From Macrostomum lignano (lineage: Eukaryota), in the NCBI GenBank assembly GCA_002269645.1, contig NIVC01002978.1:1-33682 (forward strand): a stretch of 33,682 nt of DNA, given 5' to 3'. The notes under the pieces were generated by a model. That model did no database searches and had not been told where the DNA came from. It worked only from the letters and a program-made list of their open reading frames with translations. Position numbers and translations under genes: made by a program. How positions within the stretch are numbered: the first letter of the stretch is position 1; each line of letters begins with the position of its first letter. Positions 2,937 to 26,890 of the stretch are shown piece by piece.

Positions 2937-3930
2937 TCTGCACGCGCGTCCCGAGGTCAGCTATGCTGCGAGGGACGGGAGCGCTAGATGCGCCCCAACC
3001 TGCGAAAGAAGGTCGGTAATCGCTCTCGCGTCCGCCAGAAGGGCATCTTGCTCGCCGGGGCGGGCCGCGAAACCTCTTGGACAGTCATACAGGATGTGTT
3101 GCTCGGTGTCACGTGCTCCGCAGTCCGGGCACATGTCGGAGTCGGACAGGCCGAGCCGGAATCTGGTGGCGGCGGCCAGGTTGCTGCAGCCGGCACGGAG
3201 CTGGTTAACCAGGACCTCCAGTCTCCTCGGGAGGCCTGGTAGTCTTGGCGCTGTTGCTGCGCTGGCCCGCCAAGATACTGTGTAAGGCTGCCTGGGAGTC
3301 AGTAAAGATGTCGATACTTTGGTGTTGTCTGGTGTTCTGAATGGCCAGCAGGATGGCTTGTAGTTCTGCCTGGGTGCTGCTGTAGATGTTCCCTGCTGCG
3401 CTGGTGACGACCCGGCCCCAGGATGGGGTGATGATCACCGCTGCACTGGTGCCGTCCGAGGTGCCGCCGGCGGCCGAGCCGTTGGTCCAGGCGCTAGCCG
3501 GGTGGGAGTCGCGCTCCTCGAGGTACCTCAGTGCTGTCGCACTGCGGAGGCTCCGGGGCTGGCTGCGGCTGCACTGCGTTGCCAGATTGAGGTCGAAGTT
3601 GAAGGCTTCATGGGTCAGCCATGGTGGCTGTGACTGCGGTGCGGCTCCTAGTAGAGCCGTTAAGTAGTCCATGCCGGTCGAGCTCTTGGCTAACGCGGCG
3701 CCAGCAGCCACGGTGCTCTCGCTGGTAGTCAAGGAGGACGGTGACGGTGTCCTTTGGATCTCTCGGTAGTCTCTGGTGGCTTTCAAAGGCTCGGTTTTTT
3801 AGTCGCGGCCGGGTGTCCTTGATGGCGACCTGGAGTGCAGGTGTATCCTGCAGGAGGCGCAGGATTCTTTCTCTGAGTGTCGCGCTGCACTGGAGCACCT
3901 GGAGCTGGAGCTTTCCAGACTGCTGTTGTT
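2848..3930 (-). mobile_element. 5'-truncated degenerate non-LTR retrotransposon, I group (Ingi/Nimb-like): RNase H remnant, CCHC knuckle and (GA)n tail
   Basis: Minus strand reads PPW...AWTNGSAAGG...SSTQAELQAILLAI...IDIFTDSQAAL (RNase H). In another frame it reads LPRRLEVLVNQLRAGCSNL...CPDCGARDTEQHILYDCP (C-terminal CCHC), stop near 2960, followed by the (GA)n tract at 2848-2939. Several frameshifts. Confidence 0.85.
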
Positions 3931-4853: not shown

Positions 4854-6585
4854 GGTCACATCACCTTAGTGACTGGTGATGTGACCTCTACTGGTGTTAT
4901 GACCTCTACTGGTGTTTTGACCTTAGGAACTGGTGATGTGACCTTGGGGACTGGTGATGTGACCTTGGGGACTGGTGATGTGACCTTGGGGACTGGTGAT
5001 GTGACCCGACTGACTGGTGATGTGACCACGTTGACTGGTGATGTGACCGCGTTGACTGGTGATGTGACCTTGGTGACTGGTGATGTGACCTTGGTGACTG
5101 GTGATGTGACCTTGGTGACTGGTGATGTGACCTTGGTGACTGGTGATGTGACCTAGGGGACTGGTGATGTGACCTTGGTGACTGGTGATGTGACCTTGGT
5201 GACTGGTGATGTGACCCGACTGACTGGTGATGTGACCGTGGTGACTGGTGATGTGACCACGTTGATTGGTGATGTGACCCGACTGACTGGTGATGTGACC
5301 GTGTTGATTGGTGATGTGACCCGACTGACTGGTGATGTGACCGTGTTGACTGGTGATGTGACCCGACTGACTGGTGATGTGACCCGACTGACTGGTGATG
5401 TGACCCTGTTGACTGGTGAAGTGACCCGTTGACTGGTGATGTGACCTTAGTGACTGGTGATGTGACATCTACTGGTGATGTGACCTTGGTGACTGGTGAT
5501 GTGACCTTGGTGACTGGTGATGTGACCTTGGTGACTGGTGATGTGACCTAGGGGACTGGTGATGTGACCTTGGTGACTGGTGATGTGACCTTGGGGACTG
5601 GTGATGTGACCTTGGTGACTGGTGATGTGACCGCGTTGACTGGTGATGTGACCCTGCTGACTGGTGAAGTGACCCCGTTGACTGGTGATGTGACCTTAGT
5701 GACTGGTGATGTGACCTCTACTGGTGATGTGACCTTGGTGACTGGTGATGTGACCTTGGTGACTGGTGATGTGACCTTGTGACTGGTGATGTGACCTTGG
5801 GGACTGGTGATGTGACCTTGGGGACTGGTGATGTGACATCTACTGGTGATGTGACCTTGGTGACTGGTGATGTGACCTTGGTGACTGGTGATGTGACCTT
5901 GGTGACTGGTGATGTGACCTTGGGGACTGGTGATGTGACCTTGGTGACTGGTGATGTGACCTTGGGGACTGGTGATGTGACCTTGGTGACTGGTGATGTG
6001 ACCGCGTTGACTGGTGATGTGACCCTGTTGACTGGTGAAGTGACCCCGTTGACTGGTGATGTGACCTTAGTGACTGGTGATGTGACATCTACTGGTGATG
6101 TGACCTTGGTGACTGGTGATGTGACCTTGGTGACTGGTGATGTGACCTTGGTGACTGGTGATGTGACCTTGGTGACTGGTGATGTGACCTTGGTGACTGG
6201 TGATGTGACCTTGGGGACTGGTGATGTGACCGCGTTGACTGGTGATGTGACCCTGTTGACTGGTGAAGTGACCCCGTTGACTGGTGATGTGACCTTAGTG
6301 ACTGGTGATGTGACATCTACTGGTGATGTGACCTTGGTGACTGGTGATGTGACCGCGTTGACTGGTGATGTGACTGTGGTGACTGGTGATGTGACCGTGG
6401 TGACTGGTGATGTGACCCTGTTGACTGTTGATGTGACATTGTTGACTGGTGAAGTGACCCCGTTGACTGGTGATGTGACCTTAGTGACTGGTGATGTGAC
6501 CTCTACTGGTGATGTGACCTTGGTGACTGGTGATGTGACCTCTACTGGTGTTTTGACCGCTAAGACTGGTGATTTGACCTCAACT
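4854..6585. repeat. 21-bp minisatellite (GTGACTGGTGATGTGACCTTG) with 18-bp variants, ~1.7 kb
   Basis: Constant core ACTGGTGATGTGAC with a variable ~6-nt segment, roughly 80 units. Confidence 0.97.
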
Positions 6586-7549: not shown

Positions 7550-7951
<402 letters not shown>

Positions 7952-8374: not shown

Positions 8375-8902
8375 TGGGGATGCTATCTATTTGGGGGATG
8401 CTATCTATCTTGGGGATGCTTGCTATCTGGGGGGATGCTTGCTATCTGGGGGGATGCTTGCTATCTGGGGGATGCTTGCTATCTGGGGGATGCTATCTAT
8501 CTGGGGGATGCTTGCTATCTGGGGGATGCTATCTATCTGGGGATGCTATCTATCTGGGGGATGCTTGCTATCTGGGGGATGCTTGCTATCTGGGGGGATG
8601 CTTGCTATCTGGGGGATGCTTGCTATCTGGGGGATGCTATCTATCTGGGGGATGCTTGCTATCTGGGGGATGCTATCTATCTGGGGATGCTATCTATCTG
8701 GGGGATGCTATCTATCTGGGGGGATGCTTGCTATCTGGGGGATGCTTGCTATCTGGGGGATGCTTGCTATCTGGGGGATGCTATCTATCTGGGGGATGCT
8801 TGCTATCTGGGGGATGCTATCTATCTGGGGGATGCTATCTATCTGGGGGATGCTTGCTATCTTGGGGATGCTTGCTATCTGGGGGATGCCTGCTGTCTGG
8901 GA
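8375..8902. repeat. 18-bp minisatellite (CTATCTGGGGGATGCTTG / CTATCTGGGGGATGCTAT)
   Basis: About 29 units in two alternating variants; G-run length varies from 4 to 6. Confidence 0.95.
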
Positions 8903-8929
8903 GATGAATCTTCTTCATACTAATCTCCT

Positions 8930-9495
8930 GCAAAACGGCTCTTATAAGCCGCAGTGTGTCAAAATGGCTCCCATAAGCCACAGTGTGTCAAAACGGCTCC
9001 CATAAGAATCTACGAATCTCGTATAAGAATCTCGTATATATCAAAAGCGCTCACGCAAAACGGCTCCTATAAGCCACAGTATGTCAAAACGGCTCACATA
9101 AGAATCTAAATCAAAAGCTATCATGCAAAATGGCTCCTATAAGCCGCAGTGTGTCAAAATGGCTCCCATAAGCAACAGTGTGTCAAAACGGCTCCCATAA
9201 GAATCAATGGCTCGTACAATTTGGCTCCCAAAAGCCGCAGTATGTCAAATCGGCTCCCATAAGCCGCAGTATGTCAAATCGGCTCCCATAAGCCGCAGTG
9301 TGTCAATTTGGCTCCCATAAGAATCAGTATGTCAAAACGGCTCCCATAAGCCGTAGTGTGTCAATTTGGCTCCCATAAGCCGCATTCTGTCAATTTGGCT
9401 CCCATAAGCAACAGTGTGTCAAAACGGCTCCCATAAGAATCAATGGCTCGTGCAATTTGGCTCCCATAAGCCGTAGTGTGTCAATTCGGCTCTCG
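8930..9495. repeat. 29-bp minisatellite (GGCTCCCATAAGCCGCAGTGTGTCAAAAT), interrupted
   Basis: Period 29 measured at 9131/9160/9189; inverted copies at ~9645-9690. Confidence 0.9.
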
Positions 9496-10339
9496 ATTAT
9501 AATTGGCTGTCTATGGTATGTACAATCTAGCGAGGAAATCTATCACGAGGGTCGTTCGTGATCAATATACATGTATTCTATGGTCTATGGGGAGCGGGAA
9601 TCCGAAATGCGCTAGGGAAATAAAAAAAACGAATGTATTAGCCTTAGGGGAGCCATTTTGCATAGACGGGAGCCAAATTGACATGAATTTTGTCTATGGC
9701 CGAAAGACTAGTCTTTAAGGCTAGCTAAAGCTATATATTGTAACACGACGAAGTGTGCATTTAACAGCATAGTCTATGGCCAAACTGTGGTAATCCTCTC
9801 TAGCTCTCCTCTATGTTTCGCTCTTCTCCTCTCCTCTTCAACGCGCACCTAACGCAACTGCAACCTCTTGTCTATGTGCTTTATTAATTATGCACTTGAT
9901 ATACAAATTACAGAATCTCCTATTTTAATTCTGATTATTATTGGAGATTTTACTAAATCGTTTCAAAGGTACATAATTCTTGAAGATGAAATTTCTCCAG
10001 AATTGGAGAAAATGAATTTGGGGTCAATGCCGCAGAGAGAATGGAACGGTGATGAGGGTTAATTGTGCCACTTTGTCGAATTTAGGCCCATAAAAGTCAC
10101 CAATTTACGCACTAAAATCTCGCAAACCTCCGCTATGGCAAATTGTCGTCAGAACCGTTAAATAGAGCTTCATGTTAAATAAACGAACAAAGTTCTGTCC
10201 AATTATTGCAAGCAGTTCGAGCCGGCTTAATGTGTGGGTAACTTTCCAAGTTTCCATTAAAATTGTAAACACCAACGAAAAAAGACACTGTCAAAGCTTT
10301 AATTTAGCCAGTATTCAGTATGCTGTCGAGCTAAGCTGA

Positions 10340-11065
10340 TCACAGCATTTTAAGTTTGACCCAGTCGGCGCTCGTCTCGATCTCCGCCTCCACCTGAGCG
10401 TCGGTGAACAGCAGCAGGCGGCAGGCTCTCAGCTTGCTGTTGTACAGCACGTGTCTGCAGCTGCCGTAAATCATAGCGGCTGCAACGCACTCAACAGCGC
10501 TGCTCACATTCGGCACATCCGTGAAGCAGTACTCGGAGTTGTAGATGGCTCTCTTGAACGACACTTTCTTCCAGTTGGCAAACCTCGGATCCGCAGAGGG
10601 GTCCTTGTACTCGCAAGCGAATCCAAAGTTTAATTTGCAATTGGTGTCTTTGAGCAGTCCGAGTTCGTTCATCCGAATGCAGTTTTCAACAGCAAGTCCT
10701 GATGGTTCGTTTGAGGGAAACAGACTTTCGGGACTGGCGAAGCCGTTTCCGTTGACCCTCTGCCAGCCGGCTCTGCTCCGGTTTCTCTCATCGGCCAGGT
10801 CGCTCAGGCCGAGCCACAGCTGGCAGCTGCAGGATGAGCTGATGCCGCTGCGATTGAGCGCCAGGATGGAGCTGTGCGAGTTAACGAGCTCGCCTCCGAT
10901 CGATGCGCACTGCCGATTGGCTGAGCACCAGCTGTGGCTGTGAGCTGTGCTCACGAACAGGCACAGACCGGCCTGCATGGTGAACAGTGCGGGACACGGC
11001 AGGGCCTGCGACTGCAGCAGCTGGCAGCTCAGAAGCAGCAGCAGCAGCAGCTGCTTCATTGACAT
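10340..11065 (-). CDS. Secreted C-type lectin + PAN/apple-like protein, paralog 2, intronless, 241 aa (or 239 aa from ATG at 11059)
   Basis: Leu-rich signal peptide. CTLD hallmarks CP..F....C, W..A...C...GGEL, LWLGLSD, W..VNG, EPS, ENC, KDTNC, FACE. C-terminal S.VEC...C..VLYN....C.L pattern typical of PAN/apple domains. Confidence 0.88.
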   Translation of the reverse strand: MSMKQLLLLLLLSCQLLQSQALPCPALFTMQAGLCLFVSTAHSHSWCSANRQCASIGGELVNSHSSILALNRSGISSSCSCQLWLGLSDLADERNRSRAGWQRVNGNGFASPESLFPSNEPSGLAVENCIRMNELGLLKDTNCKLNFGFACEYKDPSADPRFANWKKVSFKRAIYNSEYCFTDVPNVSSAVECVAAAMIYGSCRHVLYNSKLRACRLLLFTDAQVEAEIETSADWVKLKML

Positions 11066-11605
11066 TTACGCTAATGGATTGGGTATCGATCTGTCTGTCG
11101 AAGTCCAATAGTTTGTAGTCGTTTGTGACGCCAGCAAACGGCTTTACCAACACTAACGTCCTTGCTCTGTAAAAGTCCAAATAGCCGGTGCTGTCAGTGC
11201 GGCTGCTTCAATTTTACCTCTTTCGCTATTGCTAGTTAAGTAGTCTCGTCTACTAATTACGATGTTAACTTCTAGTGGTCCTTGAGTCTACTCATCTCTC
11301 TATGAGAGAATCGTTTGAATCTTCATCACGCGGTGGCACTGCATTTGTGCCTCAATTATTTTGAAAATTTCTAGACGGACTTGAGTCGTACAAGTAGCTC
11401 ATATTGAGTAAATCTTCTTGTCACCAAGACTCGGCGAATCTCTTTCCATTAAAGATTGTTACCTTTCAAGTCGGCGGGACTTTTTAATGAGCTGTTTGTT
11501 CACAATTATTACGTGAAAAGCTCTGTCTGTCTGACACTTTCAGATACTTCGCCGACTCTACCAGAAACTTGACAGCTGTCGGCTCTTTTTACCAAGCAGA
11601 CATTT

Positions 11606-11985
11606 CCCAAGGCATTAACCCAAGGCATTAACCCAAGGCATTAACCCAAGGCATTAACCCAAGGCATCAACCCAAGACATTAACCCAAGGCATTAACCCA
11701 AGGCATTAACCCAAGGAATTAACCCAAGGCATTAACCCAAGGCATTAACCCAAGGCATTAACCCAAGGCATTAACCCAAGGCATTAACCCAAGACATTAA
11801 CCCAAGGCATTAGCCCAAGGCATTAACCCAAGACATTAACCCAAGACATTAACCCAAGGCATTAACCCAAGACATTAACCCAAGACATTAACCCAAGGCA
11901 TTAACCCAAGACATTAACCCAAGGCATTAACCCAAGGCATTAACCCAAGGCATTAACCCAAGGCATTAACCCAAGGCATTTAACC
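11606..11985. repeat. 13-bp minisatellite (CCCAAGGCATTAA), ~29 units
   Basis: Direct reading; GG/GA variant units. Confidence 0.96.
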
Positions 11986-12353
11986 CGACAGACAAGACGG
12001 ACCCAAACAGACATTTTAGCACCAGTCTTTGCCCGTTAAGGATTAGACAAATTTCAGTTTGAACAATTTCAACCTAATGGAATAAAGGGGTATTAGTACT
12101 ATCTAGTAGTAACTCTTTTACAGCCTATGAATTGAACACGCTAGTAGCTAAATGTACAAGATAACAGGACAGGCAGTGACGAGCAACAACAAGCAGAAGA
12201 TAGAGCAAAATAGGACCCAGCTAAACCAGTCTTTATCTTCCGAAAGCAGTCAATTGCGATAACAGCGCGCGACTGAAAACAATTATAAACGCTAGAGCTA
12301 GCTGTTGAAGTGTGCGCCACGCAGTCACCCCAGAGCCCAGACAACTCGCAGTC

Positions 12354-13489
12354 ATGAGCTACAAGCTGTACTACTTCGACGGTCGCGGACGTGGAGAAAT
12401 TATCCGTCTGGTCTTCGCAGCCACTGGGGTCGATTTCGAAGACATTCGATTCGATTTGGAAGAATGGGAAAGCAAGTACAGGGCGATCTCGCCTACGGGC
12501 TTGTGTCCGTACTTGGTCGACCCGGTGACCGGGAAAACGCTGGTGCAAAGTGGCGCCATCGCCAGACTGCTGGCTGCGAGATTCGGCCTGGCAGCCAGCG
12601 ATGACCAGGAGTTCTACAGAGTTGAGAGAATCCTGCACCAGGTTAGCGCTTCGGGGTTCAACCATAAGTAGGAAATTTTCTTACAAACTACTGACAAAAC
12701 AGTAGCTTTTCAAACCATAAATTTTTTTTCTGTGGCTGTTAAATAGAGGGGTTGAGGCCTAGTGGTTAGGGTGTCGGACTTACAACTGAAAGGTCGGGGG
12801 GTTCGCTTCAGTTCACTCAGCTATAAAATGGGTGCCAGCATTGGCTGGGGTCATTGAGAGTGTGTGTGGCGACCCCCCAGTCCTTGGACTGAACAGCCGT
12901 ACGCAGCCTTCAGATGCGCTGCGCAAATAGCTGCGGCTGAGCTGTCGGTTGCACATCTGTATTATTGCAGGTGTAATAAATTAAAATTATATTTTTATTA
13001 TGAACTGTCCATTGAGCTTTGAGCTTTAGTTCGTTTAATTAGGTCAATTGAACGAGCCTTCGTCAATCAAATATCATATTAAAAAGATTTACTAGTATAA
13101 AAGCTAGAACCTTTGCTCCGTTCCCCTACACCGAAAAGCTCACGGACATCGAGAACCTCGCCATCGACATACTATTTGGCCCGGAGGAGAAGCGTCCAGC
13201 TTTCAAGAAGGAATTCCTGGAGACCAAGGCGCCTTACCATTTCGGCATCCTGGCCGGGTACCTGCGGGAGGCCTCCGACTCGAAGTTCGCCGCAGCTGGA
13301 AAGAGCCTCACCTTGGCCGACCTGGCCCTTATCAACCTGATCGACTTCATGGAGTTCATCGGCCCCGAAGCCCAGGAGCTCGCGGCCGGCTTCGCGGAGT
13401 TCGCCGCCCACCGGAAGCACGCGCTCGAGTCGAACAAGAAACTGGCCGACTATCTGGCCAACCGGAAACCGGGAGCGCTGCCGTTCTAG
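12354..13489 (+). CDS. GST: Glutathione S-transferase, sigma-like (GST1); exons 12354-12641 and 13139-13489; 212 aa
   Basis: [19 protein letters not shown]...EEW...P..L.P....LVQSGAIAR...Q | LTDIE...GKSLTLADL...DYLANRK. Phase-0 GT-AG intron; exon 2 is open to TAG at 13487-13489. Confidence 0.93.
12748..12900 (+). mobile_element. tRNA-derived SINE fragment, family B, in GST1 intron
   Basis: A-box-like GGCCTAGTGG and B-box-like GGTTCG, followed by CACTCAGCTATAAAATGGG resembling conserved SINE central domains. Shares ACTGAAAGGTCGGGGGTTCG with 24683-24784. Confidence 0.65.
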
Positions 13490-13758
13490 AGATCTAGAGA
13501 ACGAGCCGAGTTCGGAGACAAAGCTTATAATCATTTTTCAAATAATTAATTTTCATGGACAACTACAGTAGAAGGGCGCCTACGCTCGATTTCTAAGAAA
13601 TTCGAATTCTAGCGTCCTAACTTCAACTTCAACTGTCCATTTTAGTTACAAAACAAGCCAATCTACTGTAGCTGCATGACATAGAGGCGTTTGTTAGTTT
13701 GACGTATATATCTGAACGTTGTTATCAAATCATTTGCGGAAATACATAGGAAACGTTT

Positions 13759-14126
13759 TTTATTATTATTATTAGAGGCAGGGGGGTTGTGTGCACCCTG
13801 GCGCACTTTAAGCGACATAGGCACACAACCGGCGAGAGGCATTACTGCCCATTCCGCCGACTCCCCTGAGCAGGCATACAAGCGCGCGGATACGTACGCA
13901 GGCACACACTCACACAGGAGTGTACAGCGGCCCTAACTTTATATTATCGTTAGGCATGTACACTTCACTGCGCCTTGGGGGGTTGGCTCTCAAGGCCGTT
14001 AATTGCACAAGCAGAGCCAAGCCGAGATTCCAATTCAGCCCCAAATTAATGTGACTGCACTTGGAATCGAGCCTGGGTCGCTGGCACACCAGAGCAGCTG
14101 CGCTACCGCTGGGCTACGGCCCCCCT
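13759..14126 (-). mobile_element. Full-length tRNA-derived SINE, family A, with (TAA)n tail and 12-bp TSD
   Basis: Head GGGGCCGTAGCCCAGCGG...GGCTCGATTCC, tail TAATAATAATAA; flanked by direct repeat TAGGAAACGTTT at 13747-13758 and 14127-14138. Three more copies in the window. Confidence 0.92.
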
Positions 14127-14672
14127 TAGGAAACGTTTGCTAATGACTTAAATCGAAACTTAAGTACCGTAGTTAAAAAATTTAATCAGAACTACCAACC
14201 ATTATCAGCGTCAATTAAGGGAGATTAGAGGAATGCAGTCTTACAATAACTTGTATTTTAAAATATTCCACAACAAATCTATGCTAAACAGTACTAGCTA
14301 TAGTGGCCTCCACGTGTTTGGGTGAAATTGCGGTCAGATTTTTTACTTTTGCGGCAAAAATAAAAAGAGAAAACGCACACCCTGCATGTGCAGTTTGCAA
14401 CAGCTGCTTAGTTTAGTGCTTCCTCGCGAGCAAAACAGCTTACGAGTACTAACGAACTAGTTACTTCAAGGCTGAGCAGTGTGCAAACTCTATCCCATAC
14501 CCCGGACTCAGTGTAGCATTTTATAAAAATTCCCCGAAGTGCGGCTTTCACTTCTGTTTCATTGGTACCTATAATAACAGATAGATGCAGTAGACGCATC
14601 GAATTAAAGAGACCGAAACTATTTTTTCCAAGGAAAATACATTTTGTCACCAGTTCCCGCAAGGCGATCTAC

Positions 14673-16697
14673 ATGATGAGCTACAAGCTGTACTACTTCG
14701 ACATGCGCGGCAGAGCGGAAGTCATTAGGCTTGTGCTCGCTGCGGCAGGCGTCGAGTTTCAGGACATCCGGTTCAGCAGAAACGAATGGATGGCCAAGTA
14801 CAAGGCGATGGCGCCAACCGGAGTAGCGCCCTTCCTGGATGACCCGGTGACAGGTAGCACGCTGGTGCAGAGCAATCCCATAGCTGCCCTGCTGGCTAAG
14901 AGGTTCAACTTGATGAGCAGCGATCCATTTGAGTGCTACCTTGTGGATCGATTGATCTATCAGGTGAGTACATATATACGAGTACATGAACTCTAGAACA
15001 GCTGGAGGTCGGCAAACTCCCTCTATTTCGCTGAGACTTCACAATAGCAATCCGGCCCGCTCAAGGTTTGTTTCTCTTCTCAGCTCTGTTACTTTTGTAG
15101 CTACCCCCTGAGGCAACAAAAGTTTGTCCACCCTGCGGAACATTTGTCGAAAAATTCGTGTCTTCAGGCTATACCGACGCAAAATTAGCGAAGAAACCGT
15201 ATCAAGATGCATTATCATCTCATCAGACTTCACCTTCTTTTGAAATAATATTTTTGATTGCCTGCATCAGCGAGTGCAACAACAATATATTATAATAGTC
15301 TTTATTCTACACAATGTCTTAGCAGACGGACGCTCTCGCATGTGAGCTAAAGCAAGGTTCTCTTCCATATACCTATCTGTTGTCAAATTGCTCTACAGTT
15401 CGATACAACGGTGCATAGGGTAAAATTGAACAGCAAATGAAGTTAAACAAGCGCATTCTATTAGCACTGAGCATTTTGAAACAGCTGTTCTGCACTACTA
15501 CGAGTATGCATGATTATTGTGCATGTGTGCATGATGCATGAGACACAATAATAGCCATTAGTTTTGGCCATTATTCAACAGTTGCACCCGCTATTCATAT
15601 TTACCACAGGTACGAAAAATTCATCACGTGACTGCCTTCCCCACGTATTCAACTCTCTTTTTTATCTTAGCATCCGCGTGAAATAAGGAAGGGTAGATCG
15701 TTCAGTATGTTCATGTAGCTGGGCTGAATAATGATACAGGTTTCGGGCCATTCTTTAACTACGACGTATGCTACACACTGCATAGGTGCCATTGTTTCAC
15801 ACTTATTTCACGCTAATGCAACCATAAGGCTAGAGGTTTGATACATGATAAACATCGGGAAACAGTCACGTGATAAAATTTGTGTACATTGGGGAGTAAT
15901 CTGTGGAATAATGGCCAAAACTAATAGCTATTGTGTCTGGATGAAAGTATATCTATGCAATGACACCTGCGCTTGGCACCTGCGTGAGTCGAAATTGCTT
16001 CAATCAATTTTAAAATGTGTCTGTACATTGATTTGAGCAATCTTTAACTCGCGGAGCTAAACAATTTCCAGTTCAGATTACCGATTTCCAACATTCAGAT
16101 TAACGATTTCTAACGTTCAGATTATTGATTTCCAACATTCAGATCAGATTACCGATTTCCAACATTCAGATTACCGATTTCCAACATTGAGATCAGATTA
16201 CCGATTTCCAACATTCAGATTACCGATTTCCAACATTCAGATCAGATTACCGATTTCCAACATTCAGATTACCGATTTCCAACATTCAGATTACCGATTT
16301 CCTACATTCAGATTACCGATTTCCAACATTCAGATTACCGATTTCCTACATTCAGATTACCGATTTCGCCGAAGAAGCAATCGCTCCAGCGCTGTACGGC
16401 CCTGCGGGGAGTCGAGAAGCTGCCAAGCAGGAGTTCCTCGAAGCCAAAGGACCGCGCCATTTTGCCAGCCTGGTGAAGTTGATGCAGGACTCCGGCGGTA
16501 GCGGTGGATTCGCCGTTGGAGACTCGCTCACTTTAGCTGATCTGGCCATCATCAACCTGCTTGACTTCGTTGACTGCATGGGACCGGAGGCGCGCCGCCT
16601 GATGTCCAGCTTCCCTCAGCTGGCAGCTCATCGCGAACGCGTTCTGGCATCGAACAAAAACCTTGCCGCTTACATTGCCAATAGGAAAGGCTATTAA
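14673..16697 (+). CDS. GST: Glutathione S-transferase, sigma-like (GST2); exon 1 14673/14676-14963, canonical exon 2 16356-16697
   Basis: [19 protein letters not shown]...NEW...LVQSNPIA...YQ|GTGAGT, at the same intron position as GST1. Exon 2 ITDFAEE...FAVGDSLTLADL...YIANRKGY*. Confidence 0.92.
16067..16367. repeat. 22-bp minisatellite (CAACATTCAG|ATTACCGATTTC) spanning the GST2 intron/exon 2 junction
   Basis: 13 AG|ATT junction copies; three 27-bp variants carry an extra ATCAG. Confidence 0.95.
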
Positions 16698-16810: not shown

Positions 16811-17500
16811 GGGGCCGTAGCCTAGTGGTCCAGCGCGGCGCTCTGGTGTGCCAGCGGCCCAGGCTCGATTCCAAGTGCAGTTACATTAATTTAGGGCTAA
16901 ATTGGAATCTCGGCTTGGCTCTGCTCGTGCAATTGACGCCCTTCAAGGCCAACCCCCAAAACACAGTAAAGTGTACATGACTAACGATAAATAAAGTTAG
17001 AGCCGCTGTACACTCTTGTGTGAGTGTGTGCCTGTGCGTATGACTGCGTACGTATCCTTGCGCTTGTGTGCCTGTGTTGTTATTTTGGAGTCGATTTGTT
17101 TAACTTTAGGATGAGCAACGGAAAAAACAAACGATAGGCACGAAAGGCCTTGCACGGTCAATATATTTTGTATTAAAAAATGGTGAGTGAAAATTTGGGG
17201 GGTGGGGGGGGCTAGGTAGGCTAGGAGAGAGATAAGAAGGGTAGGAAAACGGGGGGAGGCGGCAAAGCGCACAAACAGAGGGGGGTGGTTTGAAAGCGGC
17301 AAATAAATCGATATTAGGCTAAACAACCACCACCGTACACACAGGTACATATGCACTGAATGAATGAGTAAATGAATGAATTCCGCGACAGCCTGCTCAG
17401 GGGAGTCGGCGGAAGGGGCAGCAATGCCTCTCGCCGGTTGCGTGACAGTGTCGCTTAAAGTGCGCTGGGATACGCACAGCCCCCTGCCTCTAATAAAGAA
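16811..17500 (+). mobile_element. SINE family A copy interrupted by a solo LTR
   Basis: Colinear with the 13759-14126 copy over 16811-17074 and 17391-17500. Confidence 0.88.
17075..17390 (-). mobile_element. Solo LTR (316 bp), BEL/Pao- or Copia-like
   Basis: TG...CA termini (TGTTG...CGACA) and a 5-bp TSD GCCTG at 17070-17074 and 17391-17395; the empty site is shown by the other SINE copies. Confidence 0.75.
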
Positions 17501-18149: not shown

Positions 18150-18860
18150 ATGCTGCTGCTGCTGCTTCTGAGCTGCCAGCTGCTGCAGTCGCAGGCCCTG
18201 CCGTGTCCCACACCGTTCACCATGCAGGCCGGTCTGTGCCTGTTCGTGAGCACAGCTCACAGCCACAGCTGGTGCTCAGCCAATCGGCAGTGCGCATCGA
18301 TCGGAGGTGAGCTCGTCAACTCGCACGGCTCCATTCTGGCGCTCAATCGAAGTGGCATCAGCTCATCCTGCGGCTGCGACCTGTGGCTCGGACTGAGCGA
18401 CCTGGCCGATGAGAGAAACCGGAGCAGAGCCGGCTGGCAGAGGGTCAACGGAAACGGCTTCGCCAGTCCCGAAAGTCTGTTTCCCTCAAACGAACCATCA
18501 GGACTTGCTGTTGAAAACTGCATTCGGATGAACGAACTCGGACTGCTCAAAGACACCAATTGCAAATTAAACTTTGGATTCGCTTGCGAGTACAAGGACC
18601 CCTCTGCGGATCCGAGGTTCGCCAAATGGAAGAAGGTGTCGTTCAAGAGAGCCATCTACAACTCCGAGTACTGCTTCACGGATGTGCCGAATGTGAGCAG
18701 CGCTGTTGAGTGCGTTGCAGCCGCTATGATTTACGGCAGCTGCAGACACGTGCTGTACAACAGCAAGCTGAGAGCCTGCCGCCTGCTGCTGTTCACCGAC
18801 GCTCAGGTGGAGGCGGAGATCGAGACGAGCGCCGACTGGGTCAAGTTCTATTTGGTCTGA
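18150..18860 (+). CDS. Secreted C-type lectin + PAN/apple-like protein, paralog 3, intronless, 236 aa
   Basis: Same motifs as paralog 2; intact ORF. Confidence 0.9.
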   Translation: MLLLLLLSCQLLQSQALPCPTPFTMQAGLCLFVSTAHSHSWCSANRQCASIGGELVNSHGSILALNRSGISSSCGCDLWLGLSDLADERNRSRAGWQRVNGNGFASPESLFPSNEPSGLAVENCIRMNELGLLKDTNCKLNFGFACEYKDPSADPRFAKWKKVSFKRAIYNSEYCFTDVPNVSSAVECVAAAMIYGSCRHVLYNSKLRACRLLLFTDAQVEAEIETSADWVKFYLV

Positions 18861-19425
18861 TTGATCTGGCAACACTACTGAACTGACGAGTTTGAGACGA
18901 AGCGATGTTAAAAAATTAATTATGATTTTTACTATCGAAATTTTCGACTTACCCCAAATTTGTCCCGAACTCTTGCTAAGCATCGATGCAAGAAAGAATT
19001 TCTAGTAGGCTGCATGGAGTTTTAAGAGGGTCTTGGATTGAAGATTCTAGATTGTTTTTTCGTGCATCTTTATTGTCGTTGAGTCTTCTTATATAATTTA
19101 TCTCAATTTCAGTGAGGCCCTAGCTTAGGCTGGTGAGGAGAGAGAGTGGAGAGTTATGATGAGAGTTGCATTTTTGACCAGTGGCCACTTGTTAGCTACT
19201 GGTTTCGGGATGGAAACTGTAACATGTTGCCGAGTGTGTGCGAAATCTTGGTTTTTCAATTAGGAACACGCTCGGGAATAAACAGGCCGTTGATTTTTAA
19301 GTCGTGCCAAAACTATCTTCGGAGAGATTGGGAAGGACAGCTCGTTCTATTAAAAAACCATCAGAGGCTGTATATTAGCTGCTAAGGCCTCATTTATACA
19401 TGTTCGATAATAAATCTAGTGAGAA

Positions 19426-19579
19426 GGGGGCCGTAGCCCAGTGGTCGAGCGCGGCGCTCTGATGTACCAGCGGCCCAGGCTCGATTCCAAGTGCAGTCGC
19501 ATTTAATTGGAGCTCAATTGGAATCTCGGCTTGGCTCTGCTTGTGCAATTAACGCCTTTGAGGGCCCACCCCCAAGGCG
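19426..19579 (+). mobile_element. SINE family A, 3'-truncated copy
   Basis: Matches the first ~150 bp of the other copies, then stops abruptly after CCCAAGGCG. Confidence 0.85.
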
Positions 19580-19790: not shown

Positions 19791-20187
19791 ATGTTTACCG
19801 GGTCTAAGTTTGAATCACTCGAACTTGAGAGCAATCCAGCTGCAGCACTAGAGCTGCAATTCTCGTCCTTCTGTCACGAAATTGCGAGACTGTTTATTTG
19901 GCTTGCCAATCATCAATTGCTGCTCTGAGCAGCTTCTTCACGAATCATGCAGCAATTTGAAGCTAAAAACATATGCGGTACAGATGCCACAAGAACTCTT
20001 CAGCAGTGAGCGCCTGAGCGAATGTCAACACTTTTAGAAACAGGCTAATATTTTTTTATAATAAACTTTCTAAATAAGTAAAACTCTAGCTCCAAAAACC
20101 GTATACTGTTTTGCCTTTGCCGTAAGGGTTAGCTTAGCCTCAGTGAATTTAGCTACAGAATACGTTTACCGGATCTGTGAGTCATCC

Positions 20188-20898
20188 ATGCTGCTGCTGC
20201 TGCTGCTGAGCTGCCAGCTGCTGCAGTCGCAGACCCTGCCGTGTCCCGCACCGTTCACCATGCAGCAGGCCGGTCTGTGCCTGTTCGTGAGCACAGCTCA
20301 CAGCCACAGCTGGTGCTCAGCCAATCGGCAGTGCGCATCGATCGGAGGTGAGCTCGTCAACTCGCAGAGCTTCATCCAGGCACTGAATCGCAGCGGCATC
20401 AGCTCATCCTGCAGCTGCCAGCTGTGGCTCGGACTGAGCGACCTGGCCGATGAAAGAGGCAAGAAGAGAGACGGCTGGCAGAGGGTCAACGGAAACGGCA
20501 TCGCCAGTCCTGAAAGTCTGTTTCGCACAAGCGAACCATCAGGAGGTGCTGATGAAAACTGCATTCGGATGAACGAACTTGGACTGCTCAGAGACACCAG
20601 TTGCAACCGTAACTATGGATACGCTTGCGAGTACACACATCCCTCTGCGGATCTGAGGTTCGCCAAATGGAAGGTGTCGTTCAAGAGAGCCATCTACAAC
20701 ACCGAGTACTGCTTCATCGATGTGCCGAATGTGAGCAGCGCTGTTGAGTGCGTTGCAGCCGCTATGAGTGACGCCAGCTGCAGACACGTGCTGTACAACA
20801 GCAAGCTGAGAGCCTGCCGCCTGCTGCTGTTCACCGACGCTCAGGTGGAGGCGGAGATCGAGACGAGCGCGGACTGGGTCAAGTTCTATTTGGTCTGA
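20188..20898 (+). CDS. Secreted C-type lectin + PAN/apple-like protein, paralog 4, intronless, 236 aa
   Basis: ATG at 20188 aligns with paralog 3; the longer GTG-started ORF in the track is not supported. Intact to TGA. Confidence 0.9.
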   Translation: MLLLLLLSCQLLQSQTLPCPAPFTMQQAGLCLFVSTAHSHSWCSANRQCASIGGELVNSQSFIQALNRSGISSSCSCQLWLGLSDLADERGKKRDGWQRVNGNGIASPESLFRTSEPSGGADENCIRMNELGLLRDTSCNRNYGYACEYTHPSADLRFAKWKVSFKRAIYNTEYCFIDVPNVSSAVECVAAAMSDASCRHVLYNSKLRACRLLLFTDAQVEAEIETSADWVKFYLV

Positions 20899-21349: not shown

Positions 21350-21711
21350 GGGGACCGTAGCCCAGTGGTCCAGTGCGGCGCTCTGATGCGCCAGCGACCC
21401 AGGCTCAATGCCCAGTACAGTCACATTAATTTGGGGGCTAAATTTGACTCTCGGCTTGGCTCTGCTCGTGAAATTGACCCCTTTGAGGGCCAACACCCAA
21501 GGCACAGTGAGGTGTACATGCCTAACGATAAATAAAGTTAGGGCCGCTGTACACTCCTGTGTGAGTGTGTGTCTGTGCGTATCCGCGCGCTTTTGTGCTT
21601 GCTCAGGGGAGTCGGCGAAATGGGGGCAGTAATGCCTCTCAACGGTTGTGTGCATGACAATGTCGCTTAAAGTGCGCTGGGTGCATACAACCCCCCCCCC
21701 CTGCCTGTAAT
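21350..21711 (+). mobile_element. SINE family A, full-length copy
   Basis: Colinear with 13759-14126; shares its 5' junction with the 19426 copy. Confidence 0.9.
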
Positions 21712-22908: not shown

Positions 22909-24543
<1,635 letters not shown>

Positions 24544-26659: not shown

Positions 26660-26890
26660 TGGCCGCGACTAACTGGTGAATAAATACGTTTCTGTAGTCT
26701 ATGGCCGCGACCAGCTGGGGAATAAATACGTTTCTGTAGTCTATGGCCGCGACCAGCTGGGGAATAAATACGTTTCTCTAGTCTATGGCCGCGACCAACT
26801 TGATATAAATACGTTTATCTAGTCTATGGCCGCGACCAACTTGATATAAATACGTTTCTGTAGTCTATGGCCGCGACCAACTGGGGAATA
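26660..26890. repeat. 41/42-bp tandem repeat (GTCTATGGCCGCGACCA.CT.G..ATAAATACGTTTCTGTA), ~5.5 units
   Basis: GTCTATGG at 26697, 26739, 26781, 26822 and 26863. Confidence 0.93.

What the first reader, a model, noticed from the sequence alone, without database searches (positions are those of the whole stretch)
16067..16367. Minisatellite made of a splice acceptor: 13 tandem 3' splice sites ahead of GST2 exon 2
Seen: the unit is the intron end plus the first four codons (...TTCAG|ATT ACC GAT TTC). AG|ATT starts occur at 16077, 16099, 16121, 16148, 16170, 16197, 16219, 16246, 16268, 16290, 16312, 16334 and 16356, plus AG|ATC at 16143, 16192 and 16241. Only 16356 gives a GST colinear with GST1. 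Starts 16290 and 16197 are in frame and open (+22 and +53 aa inserted at the junction). Starts 16077, 16143 and 16170 are in frame but hit stops (TAA 16101, TGA 16188); the rest frameshift. The first site follows unique intron sequence with a branch-like GCTAAAC and pyrimidines. Known: the spliceosome usually takes the first AG after the branch point. Inference: either GST2 is being silenced by VNTR expansion, or repeat number modulo 3 and acceptor choice act as a tunable on/off or isoform switch for a detoxification gene.
Basis: partly seen in the sequence, partly recalled or inferred. Interest (0 to 1): 0.82.

Follow-up and report, generated by a model that had tools for sequence, protein, structure and literature searches.

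The report
Tandemly repeated splice acceptor in flatworm GST

Summary
At 16072-16367 a 22/27-nt minisatellite repeats the last about 10 nt of GST2 intron 1 plus the first four codons of exon 2 (I-T-D-F). Two upstream AGs (exon starts 16057 and 16072) were missed.

The window is a whole contig of the Macrostomum lignano DV1 assembly. Two other contigs carry the same locus, one with an identical 13-unit array and one with 15 units, so it is not an assembly artefact and it is a true VNTR.

Only the 3'-most acceptor (16356) yields a sigma-class GST. The in-frame +22/+53 aa products would interrupt helix alpha4 next to an invariant Asp.

GST2 is an old, normally evolving duplicate with all family-invariant residues, yet it is annotated in none of the three copies. 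No transcript-derived protein was found. That absence is weak evidence, because the annotation filtered out repeat-overlapping transcripts.

Best reading: a slippage-born, boundary-spanning minisatellite. It is the acceptor-side mirror of the known donor-side cases (F7, CBS, IFI6, ABCA7), and it probably dilutes productive splicing. The "modulo-3 switch" idea has no support. Silencing remains a serious rival. RNA junction counts would decide.

The parts
12354..12641 (+). GST1 exon 1 (comparator paralog; 96 codons, phase-0 donor CAG|GTTAGC)
   Evidence: Translation. The product with exon 2 is identical to PAA54046.1 (P0017), found by exact look-up. Pfam GST_N.
13139..13489 (+). GST1 exon 2, with a single unrepeated acceptor (AAAAG|CTCACGGACATC = L-T-D-I)
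   Evidence: TRF finds no array here.
14676..14963 (+). GST2 exon 1 (96 codons; an extra in-frame ATG at 14673; donor TATCAG|GTGAGT)
   Evidence: Identical in all three genomic copies. Pfam GST_N.
14964..16071 (+). Unique part of GST2 intron 1 (whole intron 14964-16355 = 1392 nt)
   Evidence: The average M. lignano intron is 1.1-1.4 kb (PMC5730564).
16042..16076 (+). Presumed ancestral acceptor context: branch-like CTTTAAC (16042-16048) and GCTAAAC (16056-16062), ATTTCC (16064-16069), CAG (16069-16071), TTCAG (16072-16076). It now feeds the first pseudo-acceptors (starts 16072 and 16077).
   Evidence: Sequence. Branch-point scan: CTTTAAC lies 24 and 29 nt from the two AGs.
16072..16367 (+). 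Minisatellite. Thirteen ATTAnnGATTTC starts (12 full units of 22 or 27 nt plus the terminal 12 nt that continue into exon 2). Each unit = about 10 nt of intron end + AG + 4 codons (I-T-D-F).
16108..16114 (+). TTCTAAC in unit 2, the best branch-point consensus match in the region (6/7 to TACTAAC). The first usable AG downstream gives exon start 16143, which runs into TGA at 16188.
   Evidence: motif match only; function is inferred.
16354..16355 (+). Authentic (exon-adjacent) acceptor AG, preceded by the slightly more pyrimidine-rich F-type unit (TTTCCTACATTCAG)
16356..16697 (+). GST2 exon 2 (113 codons + TAA); GST C-terminal domain
   Evidence: Intact in all three copies. AF2 model pLDDT 93.3.
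16371..16377 (+). GAAGAAG, a purine-rich enhancer-like motif 16 nt into exon 2, just past the repeat. It is a candidate reason for preferring the last acceptor.
   Evidence: Sequence. The role is inferred from general knowledge of purine-rich exonic splicing enhancers and was not tested.

Best explanation
This is a boundary-spanning minisatellite that arose in place in intron 1 of a sigma-class GST gene of Macrostomum lignano.

Origin (inferred). A segment of about 22 nt, made of the last ~10 nt of the intron plus the first 12 nt of exon 2, was duplicated in tandem by replication slippage or unequal exchange. This was probably seeded by the direct repeat ATTTCC that flanks the ancestral acceptor (16064-69 and 16084-89). 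The array then expanded to 13-15 copies.

Geometry (shown). The 3'-most copy stays continuous with exon 2 and is the only productive acceptor. All other copies are pseudo-acceptors inside the intron.

Asymmetry with donor-side arrays (inferred). The ancestral branch-point and pyrimidine context now sits in front of the first pseudo-acceptor, about 280 nt from the real one. The real acceptor keeps only the exon-side context. The units themselves supply a branch-like TTCCAAC 29 nt upstream of each next AG.

Most likely reading. The array is a neutral to mildly harmful by-product of the very high tandem-repeat turnover in this genome. GST2 is still spliced at 16356 in a useful fraction of transcripts, and some splicing is lost to non-productive pseudo-acceptors. 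It is not a regulatory device.

Shown: structure, in-situ origin, copy-number change between genome copies, a single productive acceptor. Inferred: slippage origin, splicing outcome.
For: - Structure and frames.
- In-situ origin: the unit occurs nowhere else in the window. Its 12 exon nt encode I97-T98-D99-F100, homologous to GST1 L-T-D-I, and D99 is invariant in 16 of 16 homologs.
- Real and mutable: three contigs of GCA_002269645.1 carry it. The patterns are ABCADAEAAFAFG twice and ABCAADAEEAAFAFG once. Two whole-unit indels lie in a 1.2-kb stretch that has no substitutions.
- Repeat-rich background: 16.5% of the window and 15% of the genome (PMC5730564) is tandem repeat.
- GST2 is a long-maintained gene. 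It is sister to (GST1 + an ortholog from another sample) with 96/95 support and a normal branch length. It keeps all 18 family-invariant residues, has an intact ORF in all three copies and gives a confident GST fold.
- The last acceptor has the best local pyrimidine content (9/11 against 8/11) and sits next to the GAAGAAG motif.
- Donor-side precedents mostly use the exon-adjacent site (PMC1557585).
- M. lignano cis-acceptors carry little information beyond CAG (PMC8629364). Intronic CAG arrays in human cells attract only about 1% of splicing (PMC10614865).
Against: - There is no RNA evidence of any kind. No protein above 57% identity to spliced GST2 exists in the 5.8-billion-protein collection. 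Only the window's own unspliced ORFs match.
- GST2 is not a called gene in any of the three contigs.
- The ancestral branch-point context and the best branch-point match (TTCTAAC) both feed non-productive acceptors.
- The array RNA is unstructured (z = +2.9), so nothing masks the pseudo-sites.
- Low exon divergence between copies is regional and not exon-specific, so recent purifying selection on GST2 is not shown.
Confidence: 0.5

Rival explanations
1. Silencing, or a nascent pseudogene. The spliceosome uses the ancestral branch point or the TTCTAAC in unit 2 and takes the first usable AG (exon starts 16072/16077 or 16143/16148). Nearly all GST2 mRNA would then encode a truncated protein of 100-111 aa (N-terminal domain only) or frameshifted products. 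GST2 would be effectively dead, although its exons have not yet decayed.
For: - The ancestral branch-like motifs CTTTAAC and GCTAAAC lie 11-29 nt upstream of the first two AGs. The best consensus match, TTCTAAC, lies 29 nt upstream of start 16143.
- The 5'->3' first-AG rule is established knowledge and is restated in PMC3048548. Typical branch-to-AG distance is 19-37 nt (PMC10078293).
- GST2 is unannotated in three copies and absent from UniProt, NCBI and Logan-derived proteins.
- There is no exon-specific conservation between copies.
Against: - All three copies keep both exons fully open with only 1-3 substitutions, although the power of this test is low.
- Each unit offers its own branch-like motif at 29 nt, so the upstream branch point is not obligatory.
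Confidence: 0.33
2. Unit number (modulo 3) together with acceptor choice would set GST2 on or off, or produce insert-bearing isoforms, as an evolvable regulator of a detoxification gene.
For: - Unit lengths (22 and 27 nt) are not all multiples of 3.
- Copy number does differ between genome copies, by +22 and +27 nt.
- A-type units contain no stop in any frame, so long open insertions are possible.
Against: - Stops in units 2 (TAA) and 5 (TGA) truncate any product from the first six acceptors, whatever the array length.
- The variable units are internal. The five terminal unit starts are invariant.
- The inserts would split helix alpha4 next to invariant D99 and contain prolines.
- If 16356 is used, array length is irrelevant to the frame.
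- A neutral origin is sufficient in a genome that is 15% tandem repeat.
Confidence: 0.05
3. The reiterated TTCAG sites serve as spliced-leader trans-splice acceptors. Because the M. lignano SL ends in AUG, this would give SL-exon 2 mRNAs that encode a protein with only the C-terminal domain.
For: About 30% of M. lignano genes are SL trans-spliced. The top motif at trans-acceptors is [T/C]TNCAG, and the SL sequence ends in ...TTGCATG (PMC8629364). The units end in ATTCAG or GTTCAG, one mismatch from that motif.
Against: A good cis donor (CAG|GTGAGT) lies upstream in the same transcript. By the outron rule quoted, this favours cis-splicing. None of the units matches the motif exactly. A C-domain-only GST has no known function. 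No transcript evidence was found.
Confidence: 0.03
4. Assembly artefact: the array or its length was produced by mis-assembly of long noisy reads.
For: The assembly is PacBio-based and highly repetitive. Raw reads could not be inspected.
Against: Three separately assembled contigs (NIVC01002978.1, NIVC01003418.1, NIVC01000010.1) carry the array with the same ordered unit variants. Two are base-identical across 296 nt. The third differs only by two whole units.
Confidence: 0.02

Closest known systems
Donor-side boundary-spanning minisatellites: human F7 IVS7 37-bp VNTR, CBS intron 13 31-bp VNTR, IFI6 (6-16) intron 2, LMNB2, PDGF (PMC1557585) and the ABCA7 intron 18 25-bp VNTR (PMC5954066)
   Same: A polymorphic minisatellite whose terminal unit spans an exon/intron border, so that an exact copy of the splice-site consensus is reiterated many times inside the intron. 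The authentic site is the exon-adjacent one. The pseudo-sites are potentially functional, and using them shifts the frame or inserts sequence.
   Different: Here the 3' splice site (acceptor) is reiterated, not the 5' site. In donor arrays the authentic site is also the first one met 5'->3' and it keeps its exon context. In this acceptor array the authentic site is the last one. It has lost the ancestral branch-point and pyrimidine context to the first pseudo-site. The organism is a flatworm with low-information acceptors and SL trans-splicing. Usage of the sites is unknown here, whereas it was measured in the human cases.
Expanded CAG repeats acting as arrays of splice acceptors (PMC10614865)
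   Same: A tandem repeat supplies many consecutive AG acceptors. Splicing into the repeat depends on repeat number and can place repeat sequence in several reading frames.
   Different: That unit is 3 nt, not derived from a real splice junction, and pathological on expansion. Here the unit is 22/27 nt and is a copy of a genuine acceptor plus conserved codons.
NAGNAG and other short-distance tandem acceptors; acceptor slippage at CAG CAG in casein genes (PMC3048548)
   Same: Neighbouring AGs compete under the first-AG-after-branch-point rule. The pairs CAG TTCAG (starts 16072/16077) and TTCAG ATCAG (16143/16148, 16192/16197, 16241/16246) are 5 nt apart and could compete in this way.
   Different: NAGNAG sites are 3 nt apart and preserve the frame. 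Here the spacings are 5, 22 and 27 nt, and most choices shift the frame.
Length-polymorphic repeats next to acceptors that tune splicing (for example the NARS2 GTTTTTT repeat, which changes branch-point-to-AG distance; about 9,500 human 'spl-TRs', PMC10078293)
   Same: Tandem-repeat length near a 3' splice site can change splicing efficiency quantitatively.
   Different: Those repeats do not themselves contain copies of the acceptor. No length-splicing relationship has been measured here.
Sigma-class glutathione S-transferases of flatworms (Schistosoma 28-kDa GST, PDB 1u3i/1oe7; Fasciola sigma GST 2wb9)
   Same: GST2 aligns end to end (E = 2.5e-29 to 1u3i). It has GST_N + GST_C_3 domains, the N-terminal Tyr, and a confident GST fold.
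   Different: About 35-40% identity by eye in the printed 1u3i alignment (not computed). GST2 is a Macrostomum-specific paralog with no annotated product.

Membership tests
Boundary-spanning splice-site minisatellite (F7/CBS/IFI6/ABCA7 type) | Tandem array of 10-100-nt units | tested here: met
   TRF period 22 (and 49), 12.8 copies, score 408-432. Units of 22 and 27 nt.
Boundary-spanning splice-site minisatellite (F7/CBS/IFI6/ABCA7 type) | A terminal unit spans the exon/intron border, so the splice-site consensus is reiterated in the intron | tested here: met
   The last unit = CTACATTCAG|ATTACCGATTTC, continuous with exon 2. There are 12 further copies upstream. It is the acceptor, not the donor, that is reiterated.
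Boundary-spanning splice-site minisatellite (F7/CBS/IFI6/ABCA7 type) | Copy number is polymorphic | tested here: met
   13, 13 and 15 units in three contigs of one assembly. Whether these are alleles or duplicated chromosome copies was not resolved, and population polymorphism was not tested.
Boundary-spanning splice-site minisatellite (F7/CBS/IFI6/ABCA7 type) | The exon-adjacent site is the one normally used; pseudo-sites are silent or minor | not testable with these tools
   No RNA reads or cDNA were available. Protein collections hold no spliced GST2 product.
Sigma-class GST | Thioredoxin-like GST_N domain plus helical GST_C domain | tested here: met
   Pfam PF02798 (33.8 bits) and PF14497 (57 bits), both above cut-off. 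AF2 pLDDT 93.3 with the beta-alpha-beta-alpha-beta-beta-alpha N-domain and a helical C-domain.
Sigma-class GST | Catalytic N-terminal Tyr and conserved GSH-site residues | tested here: met
   Y7, P52, Q65-S66 and D99 are invariant in the 16-sequence alignment and present in GST2. Enzymatic activity was not tested.
Sigma-class GST | Closest solved structures are sigma-class enzymes | tested here: met
   Top PDB hits are 1u3i, 8bhz, 1oe7 (schistosome 28-kDa GST) and 2wb9 (labelled sigma class), E = 2.5e-29 to 2e-25.
NAGNAG tandem acceptor | Two acceptor AGs exactly 3 nt apart that give an in-frame one-codon difference | tested here: not met
   AG spacings are 5, 22 and 27 nt.
Contingency locus / phase-variable repeat (on-off by repeat number modulo 3) | A change in repeat number changes the reading frame of the expressed product | tested here: not met
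   With the productive acceptor the array is intronic. With the first six acceptors, stops in units 2 and 5 end translation whatever the length. The units that vary are internal.
Contingency locus / phase-variable repeat (on-off by repeat number modulo 3) | Expression state switches with repeat length | not testable with these tools
   No expression data.

The most novel reading that the evidence does not exclude
The acceptor array is a heritable, fast-mutating 'rheostat'. The number and type of units would set what fraction of GST2 pre-mRNA reaches the single productive acceptor, or how much N-domain-only product is made. Array length would then tune GST2 dosage between individuals or between the duplicated chromosome copies of this neopolyploid flatworm. 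This would be a natural acceptor-side counterpart of the F7 system, and it would also show whether 3' splice-site choice follows scanning from the branch point or exon definition.
Probability: 0.07. Interest if true: 0.75.

Novelty: new variant of a known kind. Interest (0 to 1): 0.4.

Why it matters
Minisatellites that reiterate a splice donor are classic natural models for 5' splice-site selection (F7, CBS, IFI6, ABCA7). In my limited literature searches I found no described equivalent in which a genuine acceptor plus its first codons is reiterated 13-15 times.

Such an array sets two rules of 3' splice-site choice against each other:
- First AG after the branch point. This favours the upstream, non-productive copies, which inherited the ancestral branch-point context.
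- Exon-side definition. This favours the last, productive copy.

M. lignano has established transgenesis and natural length variants (13 and 15 units), so the question could be tested directly. For the organism itself the stakes are modest. GST2 is one of several sigma-class GST paralogs, and the array may simply mark a duplicate on its way to being lost.

Tried and rejected
1. Transcript evidence through protein collections. I searched with full spliced GST2, with exon 1 alone and with exon 2 alone, and did exact look-ups of four candidate spliced products. Only the window's own unspliced ORFs (P0016, P0019) came back. This cannot separate 'not expressed' from 'not sampled': GST1 also has no Logan-derived member, and the GenBank annotation filtered out repeat-overlapping transcripts.

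2. Selection test from the three genomic copies. Exons at first looked more conserved than the intron. Mapping the differences showed that the whole stretch 15404-16611 has no substitutions between the window and L001. The conservation is therefore regional, and I dropped the claim of recent coding constraint.

3. RNA structure masking the pseudo-sites. The array folds worse than all 100 shuffles (z = +2.89). Rejected.

4. Dispersed satellite that landed on the junction. The unit is found only in the array, and it contains homologous, conserved codons. Rejected in favour of in-situ duplication.

5. Recursive or secondary splicing to remove the array after an upstream choice. A-type units contain no GT, and the only GT is in unit 2 (CGTTCA) in a poor donor context (sequence). 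Rejected.

6. tRNA and Rfam scans of the window found nothing.

7. A species-specific acceptor weight matrix was not built, because too few annotated introns were at hand. I relied on the published motif (CAG) and a simple branch-point and pyrimidine scan, which is only indicative.

8. Literature searches for acceptor-side boundary minisatellites returned only donor-side cases and the CAG-expansion case.
Full report
**What the sequence is.** The window is the complete 33,682-bp contig NIVC01002978.1 of the Macrostomum lignano DV1 assembly GCA_002269645.1. M. lignano is a free-living flatworm. It carries two tandem, two-exon sigma-class GST genes on the + strand.
- GST1 (exons 12354-12641 and 13139-13489) is the annotated protein PAA54046.1.
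- GST2 (exon 1 14676-14963, colinear exon 2 16356-16697) is not annotated.
- Both have a phase-0 intron after codon 96. The GST1 junction is Q|LTDI and the colinear GST2 junction is Q|ITDF.
- Both products match Pfam GST_N and GST_C_3 above cut-off.
- GST2's nearest solved relatives are the schistosome 28-kDa and Fasciola sigma-class GSTs.

**Check of the observation.** TRF reports an array at 16072-16367 (period 22, 12.8 copies, score 408; higher-order period 49, score 432). The consensus 22-mer occurs 12 times at up to 3 mismatches, only inside the array, against 0 expected by chance.

Corrections:
- Two further AGs precede the array, giving exon starts 16057 (GAG) and 16072 (CAG). The first AG after GCTAAAC is therefore 16070-71.
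- The 16192 site is a GAG.
- Units are 22 nt or 27 nt (27 = an extra ATCAG), in the order A B C A D A E A A F A F G.

**It is real and it varies.** The assembly holds two more copies of the locus.
- L003 (NIVC01003418.1) is 98.9% identical over 6 kb and has a base-identical array.
- L001 (NIVC01000010.1) is 93-97% identical. Its array has 15 unit starts (A B C A **A** D A E **E** A A F A F G), that is, +22 and +27 nt.

Three independently assembled contigs with the same ordered unit variants argue strongly against an assembly artefact. Between the window and L001, the stretch 15404-16611 has no substitutions but two whole-unit indels. The array therefore changes faster than point mutations accumulate. 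The DV1 line has extra large chromosomes, and its assembly contains 180 Mb of blocks at least 95% identical (PMC5730564). I could not tell whether the three copies are alleles or duplicated-chromosome copies.

**Origin.** The 12 exon nucleotides in each unit encode I97-T98-D99-F100. They are homologous to GST1's L-T-D-I, and D99 is invariant in all 16 aligned homologs. The unit occurs nowhere else in the window. The array was therefore made in place, by tandem duplication of a segment that straddles the intron/exon border. It was not made by a satellite landing there.

The ancestral acceptor is flanked by the direct repeat ATTTCC (16064-69 in the intron, 16084-89 in the exon). This is a plausible seed for slippage (inference). 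The 5' units (B, C) are the most diverged and the 3' units the most uniform.

The background is very repeat-rich. Tandem repeats cover 16.5% of this window and 15% of the genome.

**What each acceptor would give.** Only 16356 yields a GST (209 aa).
- Starts 16057-16099 and 16143/16170 end at the TAA of unit 2 or the TGA of unit 5, giving 100-114 aa. This is independent of array length, because those units are present in all copies.
- Starts 16197 and 16290 are open and insert 53 or 22 aa. The equivalents in L001 insert 62 or 22 aa.
- The AlphaFold model of colinear GST2 is confident (pLDDT 93.3, pTM 0.90). It places the junction Q96|I97 in the middle of helix alpha4 (residues 84-110), three residues before invariant D99.
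- A proline-containing insert of 22-62 aa at that point is unlikely to leave a working enzyme (inference).
- All premature stops lie in the last exon, where EJC-dependent NMD does not act (established knowledge for vertebrates; unknown for flatworms).

**Which acceptor is likely used? This is unresolved.**

Signals favouring the upstream pseudo-sites:
- The unique intron sequence with branch-like CTTTAAC (16042-48) and GCTAAAC (16056-62) lies 11-29 nt from the first two AGs.
- The best branch-point match in the region, TTCTAAC (16108-14, unit 2), lies 29 nt from start 16143.
- The array RNA is unstructured (z = +2.89), so nothing hides these sites.

Signals favouring the authentic site:
- Every A-type unit offers TTCCAAC. 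Its own AG is only 7 nt away, which is too close, and the next unit's AG is 29 nt away. This is within the typical 19-37 nt range (PMC10078293). So the last AG has a usable branch site.
- The last acceptor is preceded by the F-type unit with one more pyrimidine.
- It lies 16 nt upstream of a purine-rich GAAGAAG in the exon. Its possible role as an enhancer is an inference.

M. lignano cis-acceptors carry little information beyond CAG (PMC8629364). Sequence alone therefore cannot decide.

**Is GST2 a live gene?**

Long-term, yes:
- In a maximum-likelihood tree GST2 is sister to (GST1 + P0002, a transcript-derived GST from another sample) with 96/95 support. Its branch length (0.37) is comparable to theirs.
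- It keeps all 18 family-invariant residues.
- Both exons are open in all three copies.

Recently, unknown:
- The low exon divergence between copies is shared by the adjacent intron.
- No gene is called at GST2 in any of the three contigs.
- No spliced or partial GST2 product exists in the protein collections.
- That absence is weak evidence. [quoted passage not shown]

**Interpretation.** I commit, at about 0.5, to a neutral or mildly harmful boundary-spanning VNTR. It leaves the exon-adjacent acceptor in use but diverts part of the splicing to dead-end sites.
- The main rival, at about 0.33, is that upstream sites dominate and GST2 is effectively silenced.
- SL trans-splicing into the array gets about 0.03, and an assembly artefact about 0.02.

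**Comparison with what is known.** Minisatellites whose first unit spans an exon-intron border and reiterates the donor are well documented in human F7, CBS, IFI6, LMNB2 and PDGF (PMC1557585) and in ABCA7 (PMC5954066). In those genes the exon-adjacent site is used exclusively, or together with the nearest one or two pseudo-sites.

The present array meets the structural criteria of that class, but on the acceptor side. This changes the logic. The authentic site is the last one, not the first, and it has lost the ancestral upstream context.

Partial acceptor-side precedents are:
- expanded CAG repeats that act as acceptor arrays (PMC10614865);
- NAGNAG-type slippage;
- repeats that alter branch-to-AG distance.

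My searches found no described minisatellite made of a genuine acceptor plus its codons. These searches cover open-access text only.

**Verdict.** The structural interpretation is correct, and the functional interpretation is unproven. The 'switch' version is disfavoured. I rate it as a new variant of a known kind and of moderate interest, mainly as a natural test bed for 3' splice-site selection in an organism that can be made transgenic.

Noticed in passing
window 10340-11065 (-), 18150-18860 (+), 20143-20898 (+), 225-776 (-, degenerate): Four copies of a single-exon gene for a secreted C-type-lectin-like protein (signal peptide; Pfam Lectin_C, E = 6.7e-5). Copies 10339-11049 and 18151-18861 form 711-nt inverted repeats (97% complementary) that bracket the GST1-GST2 pair with 7.1 kb between them. 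This arrangement could promote inversion or gene conversion of the GST block.
   Followed up: partly
window 13759-14126 (element on - strand), target-site duplication TAGGAAACGTTT at 13747-13758 and 14127-14138: A 368-nt tRNA-derived SINE-like element (tRNA-like head GCCGTAGCCCAGCGGTAGCGCAGC...GGCTCGATTCC, (TAA)n tail) is inserted between GST1 and GST2 with a 12-bp target-site duplication. It is present in the window and L003. The site is empty in L001 (around 11354-11367). Related copies lie at 16811-17074 (114 nt past the GST2 stop), 19427-19575 and 21351-21711. ARAGORN calls no tRNA.
   Followed up: partly
window 11606-11986: A 13-nt minisatellite (CCCAAGGCATTAA x29, 95% matches) ends 368 nt upstream of the GST1 start codon. 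The corresponding array in L001 appears to have a different length (about 350 nt against 381 nt). This is a possible promoter-proximal VNTR of the annotated paralog.
   Followed up: no
window 4863-6541; 1730-2292; 7550-7951; 8376-8906; 9040-9492; 23066-23600; 26660-26890: Nine arrays of at least 200 nt make up most of the 16.5% tandem-repeat content. The 21-nt x81 array is open on both strands (HITSHQG... on the minus strand, TGDVTLV... on the plus strand). The (ATC)n array lies in a 290-aa minus-strand ORF (1544-2416) that is mostly poly-Asp and has no Pfam match. Whether either is coding is unknown.
   Followed up: no
window 3205-3786 (-): An ORF with RNase H / RVT_3 matches (E = 2.7e-7). 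It is probably a retrotransposon remnant.
   Followed up: partly
window 14964-15100 vs L001 12231-12330; L003 intron: Right after the GST2 donor, L001 carries an extra AT-rich stretch of about 73 nt (indels of 58 and 15 nt). L003 has a 52-nt deletion elsewhere in the intron. The intron length is therefore 1392, 1515 and 1340 nt in the three copies, independent of the array.
   Followed up: partly
window 16497 and 16499 (GST2 exon 2) vs L003: One codon differs at two positions (GGT in the window, AGC in L003; Gly->Ser in the GGSGG loop). It looks like a single templated or slippage event within the GGC GGT AGC GGT micro-repeat and not like two independent substitutions.
   Followed up: no
window 12642-13138 (GST1 intron) vs L001: The GST1 intron is far more diverged between the window and L001 (8.5% substitutions, plus 58- and 105-nt indels) than the GST2 gene (0-0.9%). 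This points to strongly heterogeneous divergence, or to gene conversion, along this 5-kb locus.
   Followed up: partly
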